DNA of 64,000 bases, from NCBI GenBank assembly GCA_965202585.1, contig OZ241826.1, forward strand, positions 48,112,001 through 48,176,000, read 5' to 3'. The DNA is from Thalia democratica (lineage: Eukaryota). Below, one piece after another: positions 3,001 through 32,520 of this stretch (positions within the stretch are counted from its first letter, which is position 1; each line of letters starts with the position of its first letter). A program made the position numbers and the translations under genes. A model generated the notes under the pieces. It worked only from the letters and a program-made list of their open reading frames with translations, searched no databases and was not told the origin of the DNA.

Positions 3001-6000
3001 AATATTGTATATACTTTGAAAAACATTACAAAAGCTGAACTAAGTTGTTAAACGTATAAACCAAAACCTGCTGTTGATCTTCAGACAGCTTGTGGTTGGT
3101 AGGCTTCATCAGGTCCTCCTCTTTTCTCTTCTTCGAAGATTCGTCTTCCTGGAAGAGCTTCAACCCGCTTGTCAACTGGAGGAACCTGAAAGCCGAAGAG
3201 TTGTACAAATCCACGTCGTTGATGGACTTGCGCTGACTCGCCATGATGTGCTGACACGGTATCAAGTATCTGTAAGGAGAGTTAATGAAACTAACATCAT
3301 CGAAAAAGGGGTTCAAAATCCACCCAGTCAAATTTGAGAAACGCTTACCGATCGAGGTTAAGGGTTAGGGGTAACATGATAGTAAAAAATAAATAAAAGG
3401 CGTAAAACGAATATAAAATAAATTAAAAAATAAAGAAAATACTTTAAAAATTAAGGTGGATTTTGAACGCGGGTGGATTTTGATAGTATACCCAAAAAAT
3501 CAACACGTTAGCTACTAGACATTAAGTTGCTTAAAAATAAACCGATACAAGCCCAAGGTAAGCAAACAAGCTTTCATGTACTTTTTTTATCAAAACTACC
3601 AAAAACCTAGTTTACTAAAAAAAATATATAGAAGAGAATTCTAAAATAACATTCAACCACTTAAAATAAAAATAAATTTACTCAGTTACTTTATACAAAT
3701 TACTGTCTTCCAGCGTTTGTATAGCAAAACATTTTAACAAAATTATACTACATAAACTTTTTTAATATTAATTTATACAGAAGTTTTTGTAACTTAAAAA
3801 GTATGAAACTAACTTAAAAACAAGCTGTAGCATGAGATCTTCGCAATTTAAATCGATCAAAGTTCTGATAAGTGACAATGACACCAACGACAACTGCAAT
3901 TGATTTATTGAACATTATTTTTAATAAATCGAAGTATAGCAAGTGATGTTTGTATAACGAATAGGTTTTTAATGCATACATTAAATTATCGATTATTTAT
4001 GTTTTTTTAGAGATTTTTAATCTTAAGTCAAACTATACCATATTTAAAGAATATTATAACTTATTATATAAGTTTATTTCATCATTATTACAAAAAAAAA
4101 AGTTGTTTTCGATATGGCTATGTAACTTTTTATCAAATATCAAAGAATAAGTACGTTATATTATGTTTGTTTTTAAAATCAGTATCTTTTTAAGTTTGTT
4201 ATGAAAGGAGTTATATAAACTTTACTTAAGTTATTTTTTTAACAAAACTTCATAAAAAAATTGATTCTAGTTCTTTGATTATGGAAATTAAAAAAAATAT
4301 ATTAGAAGTTCAAACAGTTTTAACTGGACTGTTTTTTTACCCAAAATTACTTTTAAAGTTTTTATAATTAAGAATATTGTTATTTTTTACCGTTTTCAAA
4401 GTAATTCACTGAAACTAAATGATAAACTGAAGCGTAAAATTTAATTTTCACACAAAAAGTATAAACAAGAAACTTGTTATACAAGTTTTTACGCTAGTAA
4501 AAAAACATTGAAACACGAAGTCAATATCAACCAATATGAGCTTAAATTAAGGGTTGATCATACCATTTCGATCTTCAGACCACAAGCCCTCGGTAGACTG
4601 AGACCGGTTTCGTCCTGATTAGGACTCATTAGTCAGTCACTACCTAAAAACTTGCAGTCTTCAATCTACAAACGGTTTATACATGCAAGCATGAAGCAAC
4701 TATTTGCTGACATTGATCAGTGACGTCTGCAACATTCAATACATTGTCCACTAGGCAAGATAAGAGCTTTAAGCTTAGAAAAAACTCCGCCTATAAATCT
4801 TTATGTCACTAAGGTCTAAAAAATTTTGTAACAAAAAAAAACACTTAGTTTAAAATGTAACGAAATATGTAATTTCATATGTCTGATATAGACCAATGAA
4901 CGAACGCGGTTGGAGCTGTTCATGCGCTGCACGAGCGTGTTGATGATGAGCGACCCCTCGTGATCGTGGGTGAGGACGAAGTTGAGGAAGCACTTGATGA
5001 GGGGCTGGGCGGTGACGGAGGTGAGGAACAGGTTCAAGTAGGCGGTCGTCACTATCACCTCCGATACAGACGTCTGAAAATTAATGAACTTGTTGTATCT
5101 CTAGTGAAGTAAAATTTTAGTTGTTGAAAACTATTCGGAAAAAAAGTGATGAAAACTAATTTTTTTAACATCAAAAGTTTTATTTTTATTTAATTGATTT
5201 TTTAATTATTTTTTAATTATTTTGTTATTGTTTTTTTTTTTTAATTTATAACATTAGAAAAAAAAAATCCATCAACTTCAAGTATTTGACGATCACTAGT
5301 AAGTTGTTTAAGTGCCATTAAAAAAAATCAGCCAAACAAAGTATAAGTGTTTTTAAAAAAATAAGAAATTAGATAAAAAAAAAATATTTATAAGATTTTT
5401 AAACTATTTTTTGATTGAGTATACTTGAAATAATGATGTATGTTTTTGTTAGATAACTTACGGACATAAAAAAATTACTATCAGGTTTCAATTAATTAAT
5501 ATAGCAATAATATTTTACATTTTTTTTCAACATTAATACAAAAAATCTTTTTTAACTATTAAAAATTTTAAAGTTTTAAAAATAGAACTAAACAACAATT
5601 GCTTTAAATGTAACACATATTATACTAGCACACCTTATACTAACAAATTTTTATTTGTTTAGTTAAAAGAAAAACAAATTACTTGCTTGAATTAAATTAT
5701 ATTCTATTTATTTTTTCTCTGAGATATTAATAATAGTTAATGTATGCAAACCAAAAAACTAAAGCCTTTTATAAACAAGTAAATTACTTTAAACAAGAAA
5801 AAAAAAACAATAATTTATGATTTTTTTTATGTTTTTAAGCTACTTAATTACTAAAACTTAATTTGTTTAATGTTTCTCAATTTTCATTTAAGTACGGAAA
5901 AAATATAAATATTTTGCTACTTGATCAGTGAAAATTAATTAAACTAATGCAAAATCTTAAGCAAATCAATTTATTATTTTAAATGTTACATCACGTTTTC

Positions 6001-9000
6001 AAAACAAAAACTAAATATAATTTTATAGAGTAAACAAATAAATTAAAAGTTAATTTTGAGAACAAAAAAAAAAGCTATAATTGTAATTCTGAAACAAAAG
6101 CTATTAATGTATTGTTATTTCAGCTTTTTAAAATCTAAAAAATGCACATTTATTAGTAGATTCAGCAAAAACCATTGTTCTATTATTCAGCTTACAAAAT
6201 GTACAACATCATGACTGACACACTTGTGATGCGAAATCATTAGTATATTTCCTATGCGATTAAAGTATAAAAATATATATCGATATGCCAATTTTATAAA
6301 ATACAAAACGTGGGAGCCATAGTAAGATAATGTACATAACGAATAAAAAAATAGCGAAATTTAGTTAATTTTACAGCATTTGATAGATTCTCTGTACAAA
6401 ACGTCTCTGAAATTTTGCAAATACAAACTACTTAATTTATATAAAATAAAAGTTTAAAAAAATTACAGGCACGTAAAAAAAAAAAAAAAAATAACGAATT
6501 TAAAATAAATAAAACGTTGAATTTAAAAAATTTCAGTTATAAAATTGTGATAAAAGGCTTTGTTTGACGTTTTAATCGTAGTATAATTGAGTTGTAATCT
6601 TTTAAATATAAATATTAATAAATTCTCAATCGCAGCTAACACAAGAATATTAAAAAGACAGCAAACTGAAAAACACTGGTGGAAGTAAAACTTATTTTAT
6701 ATCATAAATACTATATACGTTTTCGAAAAACCTAAAGTTTTTTAGAAAAAAACTATTCTACAAGTGGAAAGAAACAAACTAGTTTGATTATTAACAAAAC
6801 AACAACAAATAACAATTTATTCTATATTATGTGTTACTAATTAGAATCATAAAAAATAGCAGTAAGAAAAACTGAAACCATTTTAAAGAATTAATAAAGA
6901 TAATTATAGAACTAGTTAAGATAATAAAAAAAATATCTGTTTAAAATTATTTATTTTTTATTATTTCGGGTATAAAATAACTTTCATATTTCTTACAAGT
7001 AATTCTATATTTTTACTAACATCAACAAGGCATCTAGTATCTAAAACTTAGCCAATAGTTTTTCATTGAAAATTATTTTAACAAACTAATTGAAAAAAAA
7101 TTAATCGCTGAAACCTTATTCACTAGACTTACTCCGCCTTCAATCTCAACCTCGTTTATTTTCTGCCAGTAAACTTGTTGTTACACTTCTAGCATTAAAA
7201 ATTTAAGCAAAATGTTTAGCATTTAAATTTAGGTAATTCGCGTTCAGTTTTTCACAAAATGCGAAATTAATATTTAATGAAATGGTTTCTACGTTCTCTC
7301 AAACGTTTTTAAAGAAAACATTTGTTTTTAAATTTAATTTTTAAGGTCATAAACATTTTGGCCACTTTTGAAGATACTTGAGAAAATTAAGAATTTACAA
7401 CTAAATTTTTTTATCTAATATAAATTCATTAGATTGTATAGAGATAACATGCTTACTTAAATTTTATGTTAAATAATATTCAAAATACTAAGTTTTAATT
7501 TATTTGGTACCTTGTGTAGAGAAGGACCAAACACTGAGACTAAAAATCCATTGTGAATAAAGTTTATGAGCTGATCGCTTATAATAGAATGAGCTACCTG
7601 TCAATAAAAAAAAGTTTAAGTAAATCTCTAGAAAATAAATTTAACCAAGTCTATTTTAAATAGCTTAAAGTGTTTGACTAAAACTACAATGTGTATTTTA
7701 GCAATGAGGTTACTTATCAATATTTTTACTTTAAATAAAGGTTATCAAAGGAAAAATAAACAGAGAACACTTAAATACCTCTATAACAGAATTGCAAAAT
7801 TCAAATGAGTTGAGAAAGTTTGTCAGTTCAGGAACTTTAGCCCAGTCAGCCTTTTGCAGGCAATGCCAGTCATCAGCTTTTATGTCGATGTGCCTTGGCA
7901 AAGTTGAATACAATCCGCTTAAACCAGTTGCCAAGACCTAAAATTCAATTTTCTACCCTTGAGTAATTAGAACAAATTAAATTGCATTTAAAAGATACGA
8001 AACCAAGTTGGAAAAAACCGATAATAGCATATAAGCAGGTTTATTGATTGTAAAGTACTTAACTACTACCGAATTAAGAAAAAATTGTGAACTCACACAT
8101 GCGAAGTTAGAGTTGTCAACAATGTAGTTCGCTATGTTGACCTGCTGGCTCGACAAACTCATGACCAGCAACAACGCGTCTCTGGCTTGTTGGCCCACTG
8201 TGCCTTCGCTGAAACAGAACTTGGTTTATTATCAATAAAAAATTATATAAATTTAATGATTATTATACTTATCAACATACCTTTTAAATTTAAATTTGGA
8301 AAAAACTTTCGTTGAACTAATTAATAAATAAAAAAACATAATTTTGTAAAGTGAAAAATGTTAGTCTTAATTTTTAGACTTTGCACAATTTACGTTACAA
8401 ACAACTAATACTTTTTTTTTTACTTTTCAAGTTTTAACTATTATTTTAAGAAGTACCAGTGAATGTATTGAATTAGAAGGGAAAATATTAGGAACTTGGC
8501 AGGACCCTGTTCAGCATCGGCACTATGAAAGAAGACTTCTAGCAAAGTGGAATCTCTGTTCATCCAAACACACAATAAATTCAACACCATCACTCTATGC
8601 GAATCTATTTCTTCATTGCTATGTAAAGATTTAAAATGTGTTTTAATTGTGCTTAATTTTTTTTTACTGTATTGTTGAACTAGAACCAGAAAAAAAACTT
8701 TTAGCTAACTTAAAGCAATATCGATGTTAAACAAATCAAAAAATATCTTCATCAACTTAAACATAATTAAAACTTAGTAAGCAATATTCAAATTTCAAAA
8801 AACTAAAAATAGTTTTAATTTTCAAACTAACAATTATATAGGAATTTATCGCTTTTTAAATTATGTATATATATATGGAACTAAAAGCTAAAACGCTATA
8901 AGTTTGCCTATAAACAAAACACAAACTTAAAATCAGTTTCTATTGAAAGAAGTCTCATCAGTGGCTTAACAACTTGCTTGTGGTGTAACAAAGAGCCTTG

Positions 9001-23360: not shown

Positions 23361-24643
23361 ATGAAAGTAACTCTGGCCTCCTTCCTGAAATGCGGTACGC
23401 AAACTATGGCTGCCGCTTTCGAGGAGCTGGGGTTCAAAAACTGCAACTTCCTCGATCAGTTCTTTTATCAGCACGACGGCTGGATGAGGCTGATGAGTGA
23501 GGGGGAGTGCGACTTCACGCGGATGTTTGAAAACTACTATTTCTGCACCGGCACTCCGGCTTGCTTTTTTTGGAAGCAAATCAGCGAGGCTTTTCCCGAC
23601 GCTAAAGTGCGGCTCGTTAGATTTGTGTACTAATTTTCTATTGAGTTCGCGGTTATATCAAAAGTAGTTATGAAAAGTTAATTTGCTAAGGTTGTAAAAT
23701 ACTTTTTTTTTATGTTTAAAAAAATGTAGAAGTGTAATTTTTTTTATTTTTGTTTAACAAAAAAAAATAAATTAAACCTATGAACCACCAAATAGTTTTG
23801 ACAACGAGATTGTCAGACAGAGTGTGGGTGAAAAGCTACCAGGAGCAGCTGGAAGGCGTCGAAAAGCACCTAAATCAGGTTGATGTCTCCTACCAACTGA
23901 AAACTGATGAACTACAGGTCAGAAAGTTTGTAAGTCAACTTTGAGATAACTGAAATTGTATATTAATACTTTTTTTTGATTTTTCCATCATTACAGGGAC
24001 TTGCATTGCTGGTTTTGGTCCTGAGTTTCCAACAGTTAAGTCCAACGAAAAGCTGATGTTAGAGGCTTACAACAGGCATAGTGCTCATATAGTTTTGGTT
24101 AATATTAATTTCTATAGTTTTTAGTAGTATTTAAAACAATTTTTTTAATTTGAATTTTGTTTTAGAAACACAGTTTTTTTTTTACCTTGATCATCATTGT
24201 ACTTTTTCATCTATCATACTTTTTGAATAAATGTTTAAGTTTAAAAAGTTGATAGTTATAACTGAAATTCAAAATAAGAACATTTGTGTTTTACAAGAAG
24301 GTCTAAAAAACGTTGCATCGTGAAAGTAAAGAAGTTTGACGTAGCAACACGTAACCGTTTATTTTTCCAAGAATGCGCCCAAAGATCGACTCCTTATATT
24401 CGACTTCAAAGACGGTTGGGATCCGCTTTGCAAGTTCCTCGGTTATCCGGTTCTCGATGTTCCGTTTCCGCACAAAACGTCAAGGGTTCAAAAGTCAGGG
24501 AAATAGTGTCGACTGATCCGCACCCACTATTTCGGCGAATCGACAACGAAGTTAAAATTGCAAAGCTCTTATTGGCTGCTTTGTTGACGCTTGCTTTTTA
24601 TTGGTTGCCGTTGAACGTTGATTTTGGCTCATTCGTTCAATGA
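23361..24643 (+). pseudogene. Sulfotransferase-family (P-loop, NAD-dependent-epimerase-associated/Sulfotransfer_4-like) gene with apparent disabling lesions
   Basis: Exons ~23361-23606, ~23792-23929, ~23997-24098, ~24372-24643 give MKVTLASFLKCGTQTMAAAFEELG, TPACFFWKQISEAFPDAK|IVLTTR, AYNRHSAHIV, APKDRLLIFDFKDGWDPLCKFLG..PFPHK|NVKG and a C-terminal hydrophobic anchor. Intron 1 ends in AA rather than AG, the exon 2/3 phases do not match at the best donor, and there is a 1-nt deficit in CACAAAACGT at ~24475. Confidence 0.75.
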
Positions 24644-27600
24644 ACTTTTCGTTTTAGTTTATAGATAATTAAATTTTTTGCTGTAAATATTATTTCACAA
24701 ACAAGTCTTATACTTTCTTTGTAACATTAGAAGCGTGATGAGTTTAAACAACAAGTGTTATACTCAACAACAAAGTATCTTTTTCAACCTTATAAGATTT
24801 ATGGTTTTTTCAACCTCGTAATTAAAACTAAGTTTGATGTTTTATTTGAAAATGTAGTTTTGAATAGAGCAATTTTACCAGCAAAAAATAATAAGTCCTT
24901 AAGTCATATAATTCTATGTCAAAAGTATTATATTCAGTCAAAGTCGAAAAAATTTTCCATCAATAATGTTTTATATTTATCATAAAAAATAACTACATTC
25001 TTAAAAATGTAAACTGATAAACATTTTAGTGGTAACAAATATTAAACAAAACAAGTTTGTTATAATTAGCATTATATATAACGTATGATGAGTGAAGTTA
25101 ATACAAAAATAAACTTATATTCTTAATTATTTTTTTATTAATAATATGACTTTTATAAAACATTTGATAGATTAATCTTATCTAAGGTTTTATACTTTTC
25201 AAAAATATTATACAGTCACAATTTATTTTGCTTGTTTTCAAATTTGAACATATATACTAAAATATCAACACATATAAAAATATTTTAAGTTATTAAAACG
25301 TAAAACAGTACGATTAAAAACTAATACAAATACAATGTACTTTACCAGCTTAAAATATGAATCAATGATTGCTCAAGTGTAGTTTCTGGACACCAAAATT
25401 TTAATCTCTTTACCTCAATTGTCGAAAATTGCATTAAGTTTTTGTTTAAAAAAATTTTCATTGAAATCTTTTCACAACATAAACAAATGTTCTTAAAACG
25501 TTGTTTTCGAATAAATAAAAGCAATAGTTTGATACTCAATATTTATAATTTTCTTTAACTTATTTATACAGTTGAAAATATGCCTGGCAACAACAGCTTT
25601 GATTAAACTTACTCTTACTTTAATAAGCTGTCATGTTTTATTCTTAAACCTTTTTCCACACTTACTAAAACAAAAATTAGTCGTTGCAAACAAACTTAAA
25701 CGTTTCTAAATGTAATCTAAAATATTTTTAAAACGGTGACCTTAAAGATACTTGATTGATAGAATCTTGAGCCTTACTTAAAGGCTGTTTACTCTAAAGG
25801 GTGTTTCTAATTTTTTCTGCACAGCGTTGATTTTTATTGATAATTTTTTTTTAGAAACATACTCTGTCTGTATCAGGTAGTATACATCTTTACGTTGCTG
25901 ATAACAAATAACAGCTTTAGACTTTAGTAAAGTTTTAAGGTATTTCAATTCAAATAAAATTTTGCTCTTTTGGTAGTTGTTGCTAAATATAAAACCGTCG
26001 CAGTTTACTGATGGTTGTTAGTAAAAATTGATAATATATAAAAAAATATACAGTAATTTACAATTGAATTAACAAAGAGATATTTAATAATTATACAGTT
26101 CGATATTTTCTATGATAGATTACCTGGTATGTGCTATTAGTTTGATTTTCAGTAAACACTTGTGATAAATAAATTTTTGTTACATTATAGTGGTTTATTG
26201 AACAAAAATGAAAAATGTCTAAACATTTCTTGGTTCAAGGATGGAAACACAAAAGACCTCCCGGTCATCGAGTTGCATACCCAAGTTAATCAAAATTATA
26301 ATGAGATAAAAATGAAAAAGAAAGGAAAAATAACTTTACAGTCAAAATTTAAACTCTAAAACGAAAAACTCTATGAAAAATGAGACTATAAACTTACAAA
26401 ATTAAATATTTTTCAAAAAAAAAATTCAAAAAATAAAAATAAATTGTATTCAACATTATACAAACATAAAATATATATTGAACTCTTCTTTAAAAGGTAA
26501 AGTTTCAATCTGAAATGTTTTTAATTTTTAATTTTATCAATAATTTTAGCAAATAATTTAAAATTTTTAATGACTTTAAAAAAATAAAAAATAAATTAAA
26601 TAAATTAATAAATTTAAAGCTTTTTTAGAAAGTATGTTTAAGAATTTAGATTCTACCATCAACTTACTTATATACTGTACAACTTATTTATATACTATCA
26701 ACTTTTTTATAGGACTGCTTTCTAAAGAGGTTTTTTTAATTTTTTCAGTTTAGGTTTTACAAAACAGAGGCCAACGAAACTTTTGTATAATTAATCTTGC
26801 CTGCCGACTAAAAAAGTTTTCCTTTCTTCTAGCCTAGAATAATAAAGATCAATTACTAGTTCTATGCATCACTGTGTTAAGTAAGAAAAGACAGTCATTT
26901 GAATTATTCTAACGTCTTATTTTCTATACTTCAAAACTGTTCTTATACGCTAAGTATCTTACAAATATTTCATTCTATTTATTTTATGAAGTCTTAAAAT
27001 AGGAAATTTTCAAAAAGTACAAATTTTGAAGTTTTGAAGTTATTTTAATAGACATTTATTTAGTCATGATAAAACATTCAAAGAATGATAGTGTAGAGTG
27101 TAATTTTTTTTGGGTTTTTGAGAAGATTTAAAAATAAATAAAACACTTTTAAATTATGTACGTTTTCATTTAAGATAAAATTAAGACATAAAGCATTTGT
27201 ATTTAAGCAAAATTTTTTTTTTTTACAATCAAATTTGTTTTTGAATGTAAAATAAGAAACAGTTCTTTAAGATTTGTTATAAAACATAAAATTATTTATT
27301 ATACTACATTTTATGAATAATTTCAAAAGTAAAGCGTTTTATATTTTTTGTGTGTTTATTTAAAACATCGAAAACAAGTCTTGTTTTACTACTAGATGTG
27401 GAAAAATAATAAACTATCGTAAATAAAAAATTGGTACTTAAAGAGGAGCTACTTGTATTACATTACTTTTAAGTATATTTATTTTCAATCTTTTATAAAA
27501 CCCTTTCATAAATTTCAAACTTAAACATTGTTTTAAGTTTAAATTCAGCAGTGAAATTTTGTTTAAAAACTGTAGAAATTTAAGTAAGCACTTTTATAGG

Positions 27601-29377
27601 GATAAAAAATTAAGGTACGATCAACCTTTTCTTTTATATATACACTATCGAGGAAAAATTATTTACTCTTACTTAGTACTTATAAATAAGTATTTATTTC
27701 TATGAATATAGTATATATGTTTATAAATGGCTATTATTTAAGACTATATAAGGAGTGAAAAACCATGTTGCTGGAATATTGTTAGACAGCTATAAAATAG
27801 TTTAAAATAATACAGAATAAAAGCAATTAGAGTACGTGTTATTTTTGTAAAAAGACACCCAGTACTTTTATTTAAACAACATATTAAAGTTAACCAATAA
27901 TATTTGTTGTTATAAGTTATTAAAACAAACACGTTTAGATCTTTATAAGTTTTTTGAGTTTTATAATAAAGAAATTATAAAACCTCTTTTAAATCTTCTT
28001 TCTTTTTTCCTGCCATGAAATTAGGATTTTCTTAAGTTTTTACATCTTAAAATATAAAAAATCAGAAAAACCAAAAATCATTATTACATATATTTTTTAA
28101 CTTTTCTTATTATTTAAAGTAACAAAATAAAAGTTCAAAAGACTTAAGTTTGTGGAAAATTTGTGTATTAAAGTCTTATTTGTTAAAGAAATTAATATTT
28201 TTTTTTCCTTTTTATTTTTGAAATGTTATTCAGCAATAAAACTTTTTTTTTTTAAAGTAGCTTTACGATTAAAATTGTGTTTTTGGAGCAAGTTGTTTCT
28301 CTGTTTTTACTTTTTATTTCATCCAAATTAGTACTTTGCTAATCACAAAACTATAAGAAGTTTCTTAATTAGCTAAGCGTGTTTCTCAGTGATTTCAGTA
28401 ACTATTACATATCTAAGCTGAAGCAGTAGCAGTTTTCATTGTATTTGAGTCAATAGATTGTAAATAAATGTAGTAAGAATATGTAGCAATCTACCAATAA
28501 TAAAACTGAGCAGCTATACAGAAATGTTTTATGTTATATACTTATGAATTGATATAGTGTTGATTAAGCTGTATTTTTTTACTTATTACTGCGAAAAAAT
28601 ATTTATCATAATTAAAACTTACTAATAAAACAAAATAAGTTAAATTTTAGATTTATATTAACTTGGTATAATAATTTAGAATACAACCTTGTTTCTTTAA
28701 ATCAAAGATATACCTTTTAAAAGTTTTATTGATACACCAACTAATTTAAACTTTTCTACTAGGATGTTTCTTTTATTTCTAGTCTAGTTCTGAATGAAAT
28801 TCTTTATCATATATTTTTGATGTTTGGTACATGCTTGAAAGGTATTCAGTGTTATTTAAAATATAAAAGTTATATTAAAATTTGTATAACAATACATTTT
28901 TACATAAAGAAAATAGCTTCCATATACTTGAACTCAAATAAGTATATTGACTGAAATTTTACAGTTAAAGTCACTAATTCTCTTATGTTTTTTAATAAAT
29001 GAATCAAAGAATGCAGTTTGTTTGTGGAGTAGTTTAAGTTGTTTAAGGCTTCTAATATAAATCCTCAGCAAAATAAGAACAAAAAATGAAAAATAATCAA
29101 CATATAGGGGTGGCTCTAAACACTTGAACTAGGGTAGGATTGATATTTTTTATGACTAAAATTAGGTTAGCATTTAACTATGTAAACAAACAAAATAAAA
29201 ATAGTTTTAAGTATCTTAAGTAATTAGTACTTTTTATAAATGTATAAGTTTTATCAGCTACCCTAAACTAAATGCCTTGAGTACCCTCAGTTACGAGCAA
29301 CTAAACTTACTGAATAATAATATTGAAATATATTGTAATTAACTTGAAACAGGTTAACGTAGTAAATAATATCAACA

Positions 29378-31312
29378 ATGTCTCAATGTATGGCTTCTCA
29401 CGGAAGAGGTTATTATAGTGGTTATGAACAAAACAGGAATGAATCACGTGGAAGAAACAACCGTTCTAAACTTTCTCAGCATGAAAAATGGTAAGTAGTG
29501 GTTTTAAATAACACAAAAATAAAATAATAAATGAAATAGTAGAAAACTAATGATAAAAAAGCAGAACAAGTTTTAAGTTTTGTTGAAGAAATTAAAAAAA
29601 AAGTAAAACTAGAAATTTGATTTATAATTTATGTAGTGTATTTTCATTACTTAAAAACAACTTAAGAGCAACAAGCTTTGACACAGTTTGCTGTGTTGTC
29701 AACTTTTTTTTTGTGTAAAAATTAAAAACTGTTACTTCTTATATATACTCAAACTTTTAGGCAGCCAGTCACGAAGCTTGGAAGTCTTGTAAAAAATGAA
29801 AAAATACTATCTTTGGAAGAAATATACCTCCTTTCAAAGCCTATTAACGAACCTGAAATTATTGATTACTTTTTGGCTGCAAAGCTCAAGGAGGAAGTTT
29901 TGAAGATAACGCCCTTTCAAAAGCAAACCAGTGAAGGTGAACGCACTAGGTTTAAGGTTAGCAAGATGTTTTTTGATTTAAATGTTTCTACTAGAATCTT
30001 TACTAGATTTTTTACTAGATCACCACATGAGCATTTTAAATGTCGATAAATTTATTTCAATAAAATGTCTATAATGATTCACATCTAACATCTTTAAAGG
30101 TGCACCTTCTAGTAAATTAAGTAGAAAAGTAAAGAGCATTTGTTTATATAGGCGTTTGTTGCTGTTGGTGATAATGAAAAGTACGTTGGAGTAGGTGTAG
30201 AAGTTTCAAAAGAAGTGTCTAAAGCGATCCGCGGTGCAGTCTCGGTTGCTAAGCTGCTAATGGTTCCCGTCAGACACGGTTATTGGGGAGATAAGAACCA
30301 ACCTCCTCATACTGTTCCTTTTGAGGTGAGTTAAAAAATATCAAAATATTTTGATTTAGTAGTTGCGCTATGGTTCTTAAAGTTCTATATTATAGTTGAA
30401 CATAAATGATAACTGAAAACTTGAATCCTGATAATAAATCGATCAAGTATAATGAAAACCTTCTAATAGAATTGTACTACTTGCTGTACAAAGTGTCGTA
30501 TATTTCGTGTTGATTCCATTATTTATTCAATAGTAAAAAAATATATAAGTTGTCGTGCAAAAAATTGACTTGTGTTGGATTAATTTTGAAATATATAAAA
30601 TAGCAAGTGCTAGCTTTGCAGTATCTTCTAGCGTTAACTCAATTACGTTTCTCTCATGGCAATCAAAACACTTTTTTTGTATTAATAGTTAGTTATAGCA
30701 TTTAAAGTATATTTATGATTTACAATTAATTGAAGTATTTTAATGTACAAAGTTTTTAAATTGTTTGTTTAAACTAAATTAAATTCTTAACTCTAAAATT
30801 ACACTAACTCAATGTTCATAGTAGGTAGATTAAAACGATGACTTTTCAAATACAAAATCCTACAGGTAAGCGGAAAATGTGAAGCAGTTGAGGTGCGTGT
30901 TTTGCCGGCCCCTCGTGGCACAGGTATCGTATCGGGACCGGTTGCTAAGAAAATACTTACACTAGGTGGCATTAAAGACTGTTTCGTCACAGTGTGCGGT
31001 GAAACAAACAATCAGGGTCATTTAGGTATATATATTCATATTAATTGATAGTTAGTGTACGAAAATATATATTAACTATTATTATTTATCTTGTTTAGTT
31101 TGTTTAAATGTTAAACAGTTTTCCAAATTTTTTTTAAAAAACAAATGCCAGTTTAGAGTATACCATTAAAAATATTTAATACGCTACAAATAAGACATTT
31201 TAAGTTTTTTCAACAGTATTAATTTAACGTTACAGCTAAAGCAATTTTGAATGCGTTGAAAGAAACCTACAGCATGTTGAAGACCCAGCTGCCAGAAGTA
31301 CAAATGTGTTGA
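29378..31312 (+). CDS. RPS2: 40S ribosomal protein S2 (uS5)-like, strongly diverged paralog, 239 aa
   Basis: Five GT-AG exons 29378-29490, 29761-29956, 30152-30325, 30866-31025, 31236-31312 total 720 nt with no stops. Motifs include [78 protein letters not shown]. Confidence 0.92.
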
Positions 31313-32520
31313 AAGTAAAACGACCAAAATAATTATGTAAGAGCATCTTCTTGGTAATGTATATAAGTTAAATATTTTACTCTTGTCTTTTTTTACCTTT
31401 GGATCTAAGTTAATTGTTTAAAAGTTATTTGTTTTTTATACTTAAATTTCATTTGTGCATTGTAAGTTCGTTAATAAAAAACTTAGTTTCTAACTGACTT
31501 TTTAGTGCTAATATAATAGAAGTATGATAGCTTTTGACGGTCAAACATATTCTCCACAATTTAACTTGCAGGTCTAAAGAAATAATATTTCATATATAAT
31601 TAAATTTTGACTTTCATAAAATTGATAATACAGTACTTCAACGATATATAAGTTTGTTTCAAAATCGTTAAAAATTTGTTAAAATAAATCGTTTAATTCA
31701 AAGATTTTATATATTTTTGTACATTAATACCGATAAGTAAATAATACAACTAAAAATATTGATAATCTAACTGGAAGTAGTTTGTAAAAAATAACGGATT
31801 GAATTAACAAATATTAGCGTTTTTTACAAACAAACTAAAAAGAAAAAACAGTCCCATCAAATTTATATTATCAGTAAGGTATTTTATTACTTACAACCAA
31901 GTACTAACTAATACAGTACATTTTCCTTAAATTTGTATTCGACTCCGATATTTTCTGATGTTTTATGTTATTAATTTACTTGAACGGTATTAATACAAAA
32001 ACCAGCATATTTTCTAATCTAAATGAAATTTAAAATTTTAAAAGATAATTTAAGTTATTTTAATCTAAATCTCTATCAATTTAAATTGTTTTCCAAAATT
32101 TTTTAGTTGTTAGATTAAAATTTACAATTTTTGTTCTGTGACAACTCTAAACAATAAATAATATCTACAAATATTATATAACACTTAAGAAACATCGTAT
32201 GTTTAATATTTTGGTCTTTTATTAATTTTTCTTTAAATTTATTGTCTCTTTTTTTCTTAAATTTTTAGTCAAAATTTAATATCTAATAACATTATTTGGA
32301 AATCTAAGAAAATAAGTCAAATATAAATTACTTACTACCTGTTTTAAACATTTAAGTAGTTTTGTTTTATATTTAAGTGTTCGACAACTGTTAAGGCTCA
32401 CTAATACTTTTTCTCGACTTTAATGTTTTTTGCAGATTTACAATAACAAAATCATCGAGTAAGAAATTGCCTATAAATAACTTTTAAGAAAAAAATGACA
32501 TTTAGATGATTAAAAGTTGT

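What the first reader, a model, noticed from the sequence alone, without database searches (positions are those of the whole stretch)
29378..31312. Intact but highly diverged RPS2/uS5 paralog: candidate specialised-ribosome protein
Seen in sequence: five canonical exons give an uninterrupted 239-aa ORF, so this is a gene-level duplicate and not a processed pseudogene. My manual alignment to the human sequence as recalled gives only about 120/192 core identities (~60%), low for a protein normally very conserved across animals. Changes hit conserved surfaces, often with charge loss or reversal: QTRAGQRTRFK to [18 protein letters not shown] to VEVSKEV, GRCGSV to GKCEAV, GCTATLGNF to GETNNQGHL. 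The N-terminal RGG repeats and the C-terminal tail are reduced or lost. Established: uS5 lines the mRNA entry channel and affects decoding accuracy. Inference: a tissue- or stage-specific paralog or an extraribosomal neofunctionalised copy.
Basis: partly seen in the sequence, partly recalled or inferred. Interest (0 to 1): 0.72.

Follow-up and report, generated by a model that had tools for sequence, protein, structure and literature searches.

The report
Expressed, highly diverged uS5 (RPS2) paralog
This marine animal keeps normal copies of ribosomal protein uS5/RPS2 elsewhere in its genome, and also carries here an intact, spliced, selectively maintained but strongly remodelled extra copy whose role (alternative ribosome part or a new job) is still untested.

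Summary
Five GT-AG exons (29378-31312, +) give an uninterrupted 239-aa protein with both uS5 domains. It is a true paralog. The genome also has two canonical RPS2 genes on another chromosome (274 and 275 aa), and the window copy is 55% identical to them. A second intact diverged copy lies 318 kb away in inverted orientation (89% aa identity), and an unplaced contig carries a dead copy. Exons 2-4 have the same lengths as in one canonical gene, so this was a DNA-level duplication, not a retrocopy.

A 714-nt contig from a marine metatranscriptome skips exactly the four predicted introns, at about 95% identity. Against four environmental homologs the window copy shows purifying selection (pN/pS 0.23-0.32, p about 1e-5). 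Between the two genomic copies dN/dS is about 0.8-1.5, and dead copies exist, so the family turns over.

The protein has lost most RG repeats and the 36-aa C-terminal tail. It differs at 41 of 144 near-invariant animal uS5 positions, including the loop RAGQ to SEGE and the mammalian ram site A226 to V. Net charge drops from +23 to +9.

Tissue specificity and ribosome incorporation are untested. No full-length counterpart or paper was found.

The parts
29378..29490 (+). Exon 1: ATG plus a degenerate N-terminal extension of 37 codons and 2 nt. Only two RG motifs remain.
   Evidence: The RNA contig covers 29450-29489 and joins to exon 2.
29761..29956 (+). Exon 2: the segment before the S5 domain plus the first 24 positions of the S5 N-terminal domain. 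It carries the remodelled loop [11 protein letters not shown].
   Evidence: Pfam PF00333 positions 1-24. Same 196-nt length as exon 2 of both canonical genes. Spliced in RNA.
30152..30325 (+). Exon 3: the rest of the S5 N-terminal (dsRBD-like) domain. GDYNGHVGLGVKCSKEV has become [17 protein letters not shown].
   Evidence: PF00333, 44.0 bits. PDB uS5 hits at E 6e-19.
30866..31025 (+). Exon 4: the S5 C-terminal domain. PAPRGTGIV is kept. Val stands at the position of mammalian ram site A226. It ends in GETNNQGHL.
   Evidence: PF03719, 56.9 bits. PDB alignment 1-51 to 184-234 of the 293-aa chains..
31236..31312 (+). Exon 5: a short C-terminal end of 24 codons plus a TGA stop. The canonical 36-aa tail is absent.
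   Evidence: Spliced in RNA.
31313..31379 (+). At least 67 nt of 3' UTR.
   Evidence: The RNA contig runs on to 31379 (table 8).
27093..31916 (.). Extent of the DNA segment shared with the second diverged locus (C1:48.459 Mb, inverted) and with the environmental scaffold L013. Flanks are 70-76% identical. The core 29707-31084, introns included, is about 88% identical.

Best explanation
The window holds a functional, transcribed member of a small family of strongly diverged uS5/RPS2 paralogs that turns over by gene birth and death. The family arose by DNA-level duplication of an intron-containing canonical RPS2 gene, then changed very fast, and has since been held under purifying selection in the window's lineage (copy A). 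A later inverted duplication produced copy B, which looks relaxed, and a dead copy.

The protein keeps both uS5 domains. It has lost the RG-rich N-terminal extension and the eukaryote-specific C-terminal tail. It has also turned acidic in the hairpin loop and changed the sheet surfaces that are almost invariant in animal uS5.

The most likely mode of action is inferred, not shown. The protein would take the uS5 place in a subset of 40S subunits and change the mRNA-entry and decoding-fidelity side of the subunit. It would probably do so without the usual RG methylation and without the N-terminal-extension-dependent handling of canonical uS5.
For: The gene is intact, with five GT-AG exons and both Pfam domains.

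Canonical copies are retained elsewhere.

Exon lengths 196, 174 and 160 nt are the same as in the canonical AT-rich gene, so intron positions are shared.

A 714-nt contig of a marine metatranscriptome run skips exactly 29490/29761, 29956/30152, 30325/30866 and 31025/31236, all GT..AG. It best fits the A-type environmental allele L016. Of the five contig differences the tool listed, four are synonymous.

For copy A against environmental homologs, pN/pS is 0.32 (L014+L017, p 2e-5) and 0.23 (L013+L016, p 3e-6).

In AT-biased neutral simulations, 0 of 2000 replicates keep a 239-codon frame open at 20% or more divergence. The gene is 41.6% different from its canonical relative.

The derived motifs (ITPFQKQTS[ED]G, VEVSK, GE[TN]NNQGHL, CFVTVCG) are conserved across the environmental homologs.

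The best PDB matches are ribosome-bound uS5 chains.
Against: Between copies A and B, dN/dS is 0.78 (NG86), 0.99 (YN00) or 1.5 (ML), which is not below 1.

Two family members are dead. The C467 copy has a stop, a frameshift and a lost donor. The Tara scaffold L013 has a TAG at the last codon of exon 2 and lacks exon 1.

Copy A differs at 41 of 144 positions that are at least 97% conserved in 140 animal uS5 sequences. Net charge falls from +23 to +9, and in the core from +14 to +4. Both eukaryote-specific extensions are lost. These changes could prevent 40S assembly.

Only one RNA contig was found. It comes from an environmental sample and is about 95% identical, not identical.

No full-length diverged-type protein appeared in the large protein collections.

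Ribosome incorporation and tissue specificity are untested.
Confidence: 0.5

Rival explanations
1. The copy has taken on a new role outside the ribosome. It keeps the uS5 fold but no longer assembles into 40S subunits. It would act as a free RNA-binding or regulatory protein, or as a decoy for factors that bind uS5.
For: The core loses ten positive charges and 28% of near-invariant positions are replaced. The RG-rich N-terminus and the C-terminal tail are lost. The stem branch of 3.17 substitutions per site compares with about 0.05-0.1 for canonical tips. After that burst, purifying selection set in. This is the pattern expected after a change of function.
Against: No partner or activity is indicated by any result. 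Core motifs of ribosomal uS5 such as [18 protein letters not shown] and PHTVP are retained. Very diverged ribosomal paralogs are reported to still enter ribosomes, for example Drosophila eRpL22-like (PMC6743460, title and abstract seen).
Confidence: 0.25
2. The duplicate is decaying. The family consists of young and old copies drifting towards pseudogenes. The window copy happens to be still open and is transcribed only at background level.
For: dN/dS between A and B is about 0.8-1.5. Dead copies exist at C467 and L013. Under neutrality, about 10% of frames stay open at the 5% divergence seen between A and B. No diverged-type protein was found in the large protein collections, including sequences from the 'merc' source.
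Against: Copy A shows significant purifying selection against four independent environmental homologs. The frame is open despite 41.6% nucleotide divergence from canonical. Exons are 93-96% identical between A and B, against 82-91% for introns 1-3 and 72-76% for flanks. All splice sites are intact and used. The excess of amino-acid changes sits on copy B (tip branch 0.13 against 0.068).
Confidence: 0.2
3. It is not a separate gene. It would be the organism's only RPS2 in a fast-evolving proteome, or an assembly or contamination artefact.
For: None was found.
Against: Two canonical RPS2 genes lie on chromosome-scale contig C4. The locus, introns included, is covered by contigs of three DNA runs from two labelled organisms and two studies.
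Confidence: 0.01

Closest known systems
Canonical eukaryotic uS5 (RPS2; yeast Rps2/SUP44; bacterial S5)
   Same: It has two domains, S5 N-terminal (dsRBD-like) and S5 C-terminal. Core motifs are conserved ([30 protein letters not shown]). Its intron positions match one canonical gene of the same genome.
   Different: It is 55% identical to its own genome's canonical copies, which are 82-96% identical to other animals' uS5. The RG repeats are nearly gone and the 36-aa C-terminal tail is missing. Of 144 near-invariant positions, 41 are changed. The loop RAGQ has become SEGE. Val stands at the mammalian ram position A226. Net charge is +9 against +23.
Germline- or tissue-enriched ribosomal protein paralogs (Drosophila eRpL22-like and RpS5b; vertebrate Rps27l)
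   Same: A second locus encodes a variant of a core ribosomal protein while the canonical gene is retained. The published cases show paralog-specific ribosomes or expression that has split between the paralogs (PMC6743460, PMC6760144, PMC10313321; abstracts seen).
   Different: No tissue data and no ribosome association exist for this gene. No diverged uS5 paralog turned up in the literature searches. The family here also includes dead copies and a relaxed sister copy.
RPS2 processed pseudogenes and retrocopies
   Same: They are extra genomic copies of RPS2. One such intronless, frame-broken canonical copy was seen in a Tara contig (L015/P0007).
   Different: The window gene has four introns at the canonical positions, an open frame, used splice sites and a signal of purifying selection.

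Membership tests
uS5 / RPS2 protein family | Ribosomal_S5 N-terminal domain (PF00333) above the curated cut-off | tested here: met
   Exon 3 scores 44.0 bits against a cut-off of 27.1, covering profile positions 25-65. Exon 2 supplies positions 1-24 at 21.7 bits.
uS5 / RPS2 protein family | Ribosomal_S5_C domain (PF03719) above the curated cut-off | tested here: met
   Exon 4 scores 56.9 bits against a cut-off of 21.5. PDB uS5 chains match at E 1e-15.
uS5 / RPS2 protein family | Eukaryote-type RG/RGG-rich N-terminal extension | tested here: not met
   The canonical copies have a run of about 14 RG dipeptides. The window protein has GRG and RGR only.
uS5 / RPS2 protein family | Eukaryote-specific C-terminal extension (the stretch after ...TYSYLTPDLWK...) | tested here: not met
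   The protein ends about 36 residues earlier than the canonical copies.
uS5 / RPS2 protein family | Physical component of the 40S subunit | not testable with these tools
   This needs ribosome-fraction proteomics or cryo-EM.
Specialised (paralog-specific) ribosomal protein | Separate locus, with the canonical gene retained in the same genome | tested here: met
   Canonical genes lie at C4:47.08 Mb and C4:55.73 Mb. The window is at C1:48.14 Mb.
Specialised (paralog-specific) ribosomal protein | Transcribed and correctly spliced | tested here: met
   One 714-nt RNA contig skips all four predicted introns. It is about 95% identical and comes from an environmental sample, so it is an allele or a close relative.
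Specialised (paralog-specific) ribosomal protein | Protein sequence under purifying selection | tested here: inconclusive
   For copy A against environmental homologs, pN/pS is 0.23-0.32 with p about 1e-5 to 1e-6. Between copies A and B, dN/dS is 0.8-1.5.
Specialised (paralog-specific) ribosomal protein | Tissue- or stage-restricted expression and a paralog-specific translation effect | not testable with these tools
   No RNA run of the species itself was offered.
Processed pseudogene | Intronless copy with frame disruptions | tested here: not met
   The gene has four introns and an open 239-codon frame.

The most novel reading that the evidence does not exclude
A lineage of marine animals maintains a dedicated alternative uS5. 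This protein builds a distinct class of 40S subunits with a recharged mRNA-entry and decoding-fidelity surface: the acidic hairpin loop SEGE, Val at the ram site, and no RG or C-terminal extensions. If so, it would be a natural, selectable variant of the ribosome's accuracy centre, used in particular cells or stages.
Probability: 0.2. Interest if true: 0.8.

Novelty: new member of a known kind. Interest (0 to 1): 0.5.

Why it matters
uS5 lies at the mRNA entry site and influences decoding accuracy. A single change at mammalian A226 is a ribosomal-ambiguity mutation that could not be transmitted in mice (PMC8187632). A naturally retained uS5 copy that is changed at that very position and across otherwise invariant surfaces would be a ready-made test case. 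It could show whether ribosomal-protein paralogs really create functionally different ribosomes, or whether such copies escape the ribosome for other roles. The family also offers an intact conserved copy, a relaxed copy and dead copies side by side. That makes it a compact system for studying how duplicates of an essential, dosage-sensitive ribosomal gene survive or die.

Tried and rejected
Full-length diverged-type proteins were not found.
- The representative search with exon 2 gave only two environmental exon fragments among 150 hits.
- The word-index search with exon 4 gave two fragments.
- Two profile searches, built on a canonical scaffold plus diverged exon pieces (A2, A3), returned only canonical uS5. 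Yet the A3 profile scores the window protein at 358 bits, above canonical sequences at 335 bits or less. The pre-filter of 8000 candidates may have excluded such proteins, so this is not proof of absence.
- The JGI metagenome scan with exon 4 gave only matches of 48-60% identity, taken as canonical-type.

The first run request failed as busy. It worked on retry.

Scans of this genome for diverged paralogs of neighbouring 40S proteins were too insensitive across introns to say anything. These were uS3 (PF00189), uS8 (PF00410) and uS4 (PF00163).

The tree could not place the diverged clade. An AU test does not reject a sister position to the genome's own canonical clade (p 0.59). Shared derived residues are equivocal, two for and three against.

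No terminal inverted or long direct repeats bound the duplicated segment, so capture by a transposon is not indicated.

The chaetognath ribosomal-paralog literature was checked as a lead only. The paper does not mention RPS2, and the organism's identity is unknown to me.

No structure prediction was run. The spliced protein has no single reference and long sequences may not be typed.

Full report
OBSERVATION. Five exons join into a 720-nt frame of 239 codons plus TGA: 29378-29490, 29761-29956, 30152-30325, 30866-31025 and 31236-31312. All are on the + strand and every intron is GT..AG. Pfam places the Ribosomal_S5 N-terminal domain across exons 2 and 3. Exon 3 alone scores 44.0 bits against a cut-off of 27.1. 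The Ribosomal_S5_C domain falls in exon 4 at 56.9 bits against a cut-off of 21.5. The best solved-structure matches of exons 3 and 4 are uS5 chains of eukaryotic 40S subunits (E 6e-19 and 1e-15).

OTHER uS5 GENES IN THE GENOME. The window is C1:48,112,001-48,176,000 of an 802-Mb assembly that is AT-rich (about 25% GC in this window). Domain scans and a DNA scan of the whole genome found five further uS5 loci beside the window gene:
- A canonical gene at C4:47.08 Mb: five exons, 274 aa, GC3 0.30.
- A canonical gene at C4:55.73 Mb: four exons with intron 3 missing, 275 aa, GC3 0.73.
- A second diverged gene at C1:48.459 Mb on the opposite strand, 318 kb from the window gene, with five exons and an intact 239-aa frame.
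- A diverged copy on the unplaced contig C467.
- A distant bacterial-type hit on C7, which I take to be the mitochondrial uS5. I did not follow it.

I built the gene models by hand from splice sites. The two canonical proteins are 93% identical to each other and 82-96% identical to other animals' uS5. The window protein (copy A) is 55% identical to them and 89% identical to the second diverged copy (copy B).

HOW IT AROSE. Exons 2, 3 and 4 are 196, 174 and 160 nt long in copy A, in copy B and in the AT-rich canonical gene. Intron positions and phases are therefore shared, and the family began as a DNA-level duplication, not a retrocopy.

Homology between A and B runs through introns and flanks, roughly over window 27,093-31,916. 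Identity is 70-76% in the flanks and about 88% in the core 29,707-31,084, introns 2 and 3 included. I read the more similar core as gene conversion between the copies. That is an inference. It fits the DNA runs, where an A-type contig carries B-type letters at 29847, 29848, 29867 and 29902.

The C467 copy is collinear with locus B at 94-96% over 10 kb, so it is either a haplotig or a third locus. It is dead: it has a stop in exon 2, an 8-nt frame-shifting insertion in exon 3 and a lost donor after exon 4. No terminal repeats bound the duplicated unit.

EXPRESSION. One RNA run was offered, a marine metatranscriptome from 2016. It holds a 714-nt contig laid on 29450-29489, 29760-29954, 30150-30323, 30864-31023 and 31234-31379. 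The contig skips exactly the four predicted introns with GT..AG ends and differs at 38 letters plus one gap.

Its states are a mosaic of A and B. In the last exon and the 3' UTR, its count of 16 changes and one gap closely matches the 15 changes and one gap of an environmental genomic contig, L016. L016 has the A-type intron 4, and its gap falls in the UTR at 31335. Of the five contig differences the tool listed, four are synonymous, and the fifth turns codon 67 back to the canonical Lys.

So an A-type allele or a very close relative is transcribed and spliced in nature. Level, tissue and stage are unknown. Contigs of three DNA runs, from two labelled organisms, cover the whole locus.

SELECTION. 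Between A and B, dN/dS is 0.78 (NG86), 0.99 (YN00) or 1.5 (ML), with 28.5 non-synonymous and 10.5 synonymous differences. That is not below 1 (p 0.24).

More distant members of the diverged family exist as exon fragments in marine metagenome assemblies. L013 is a Tara scaffold with exon 2 and part of exon 3. L014 holds exon 2, L016 holds exons 4 and 5, and L017 holds exon 4. Against these, copy A gives dN/dS of 0.12-0.27. Pooled pN/pS is 0.32 (L014+L017, binomial p 2e-5) and 0.23 (L013+L016, p 3e-6). Copy B gives 0.43 and 0.54.

In the protein tree, B's tip branch (0.13) is twice A's (0.068). The near-neutral A-B value is therefore largely B's doing.

Against the canonical genes, dS is saturated and dN is 0.34-0.39. 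A substitution-only, AT-biased neutral simulation keeps a 239-codon frame open in 10% of replicates at 5% divergence, in 1.5% at 10%, and in 0 of 2000 at 20% or more. Copy A is 41.6% different from the canonical AT-rich gene.

L013 is itself dead. It has a TAG as the last codon of exon 2 and a deletion of 1.3-1.5 kb that removes exon 1. Overall the family turns over, and copy A is on the conserved side of it.

WHAT CHANGED IN THE PROTEIN. In an alignment with 140 canonical animal uS5 sequences, 144 columns present in copy A are at least 97% conserved. A differs at 41 of them and B at 43, and nearly all of these differences are shared. They include:
- R95S, A96E and Q98E, which turn the loop RAGQ into SEGE.
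- G113K and H114Y.
- K120E and C121V.
- R145H and K161E.
- G167E, in copy A only.
- A204V, N213H and F214L.

Net charge falls from +23 to +9. In the 176-residue core it falls from +14 to +4.

The ungapped PDB alignment puts exon-4 residues 1-51 on residues 184-234 of the 293-aa mammalian chains. Residue 204 of copy A therefore corresponds to mammalian residue 226. Rps2-A226Y is a ribosomal-ambiguity mutation that raises misreading in mammalian cells, and it could not be transmitted through the mouse germline (PMC8187632). Here the residue is Val in A, B, L016 and L017.

From my own knowledge, not tested here: the RAGQ loop aligns with the bacterial S5 hairpin that carries spectinomycin-resistance changes and the G28D ram change. 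The RG repeats are the PRMT3 methylation site. The N-terminal extension is where the Tsr4/PDCD2 chaperone binds.

The derived motifs are conserved among the environmental homologs, which argues that they are maintained states and not decay.

PHYLOGENY AND DISTRIBUTION. The diverged clade sits on a stem of 3.17 substitutions per site, against tips of about 0.05-0.1 for canonical sequences, and its position is unresolved. Holding it together with the genome's own canonical clade is not rejected (p-AU 0.59). Shared derived residues are equivocal. The age of the first duplication therefore stays open.

Outside this genome I found the diverged type only in the four marine metagenome fragments, in the DNA runs and in the one RNA contig. 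No full-length protein appeared in any protein search. Literature searches gave no described diverged uS5 paralog.

MECHANISM AND RIVALS. These points are shown: an intact gene, retained canonical copies, splicing, purifying selection on copy A, and coherent, conserved remodelling of otherwise invariant surfaces.

These points are inferred: the protein folds like uS5 and replaces it in some 40S subunits, changing the entry-channel and fidelity side of the subunit. I give this reading 0.5. An extraribosomal new function fits the loss of charge and of both extensions about as well, and I give it 0.25. A decaying duplicate remains possible because of the A-B dN/dS and the dead copies, and I give it 0.2. 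An artefact or an only-copy reading is excluded.

COMPARISON WITH KNOWN SYSTEMS. The gene meets the domain definition of the uS5 family but fails two features typical of eukaryotes, the RG extension and the C-terminal tail. As a kind of thing it belongs with diverged ribosomal-protein paralogs such as Drosophila eRpL22-like and RpS5b or vertebrate Rps27l (PMC6743460, PMC6760144, PMC10313321; abstracts seen). For uS5 I found no described counterpart. I therefore rate it a new member of a known kind, of moderate interest until expression pattern and ribosome association are measured.

Noticed in passing
L008 (G000:C4:55725500-55735499; exons at locus 2453-2586, 4138-4333, 4948-5281, 5623-5786) and L009 (G000:C4:47072000-47081999; exons at locus 269-399, 4301-4496, 5355-5528, 5999-6158, 6672-6835): Two intact canonical RPS2 genes lie 8.7 Mb apart on one chromosome. 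They are 93% identical in protein but have opposite codon usage, GC3 0.73 against 0.30, in a window of about 25% GC. The GC-rich copy has lost intron 3. dS between them is saturated.
   Followed up: partly
L012 (G000:C467:34000-43999), exons at locus 3630-3742, 3955-4150, 4334-4515, 5053-5212, 6122-6198: A dead diverged-type uS5 copy with a stop in exon 2, an 8-nt insertion in exon 3 and a lost donor after exon 4. It sits on an unplaced 50.6-kb contig that is 94-96% identical to the C1:48.459 Mb locus over 10 kb. It is either a null haplotype of that locus or a third locus.
   Followed up: partly
L010 (G000:C1:48455000-48464999, minus strand): The second intact diverged uS5 gene has an extra stretch of about 750 bp in intron 4 compared with the window copy. 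It also has about twice the amino-acid change on its tip branch.
   Followed up: partly
L015 (Tara Oceans marine metagenome contig, gene 1454-1948): A genomic contig carries an intronless canonical-type RPS2 copy with exons 1-3 fused and frameshifts at both ends (protein P0007). It looks like a processed retrocopy in a relative of this animal.
   Followed up: no
L013 (Tara metagenome scaffold, 2284 bp): A diverged-type uS5 locus in another marine organism. Its upstream flank is collinear with window 27093-28186, but it lacks the 1.3-1.5 kb that holds exon 1, and it has TAG as the last codon of exon 2. It is a dead copy.
   Followed up: partly
window 29707-31084 against flanks 28910-29602 and 31092-31916: Identity to the paralogous locus steps from about 75% in the flanks to about 88% in the core, introns included. 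DNA runs show A-type contigs with B-type letters at 29847, 29848, 29867 and 29902. This suggests gene conversion between the two diverged copies.
   Followed up: partly
L011 (G000:C7:17212000-17221999): A bacterial-type S5 N-terminal domain is uninterrupted over profile positions 5-64, and an S5_C piece lies 2.7 kb downstream. It is probably the mitochondrial uS5 gene.
   Followed up: no
window 23361-23633 (+): The nearest sizeable open frame upstream of the uS5 gene is a 90-aa exon-like ORF. It was not identified. The uS5 gene otherwise sits alone in AT-rich DNA.
   Followed up: no
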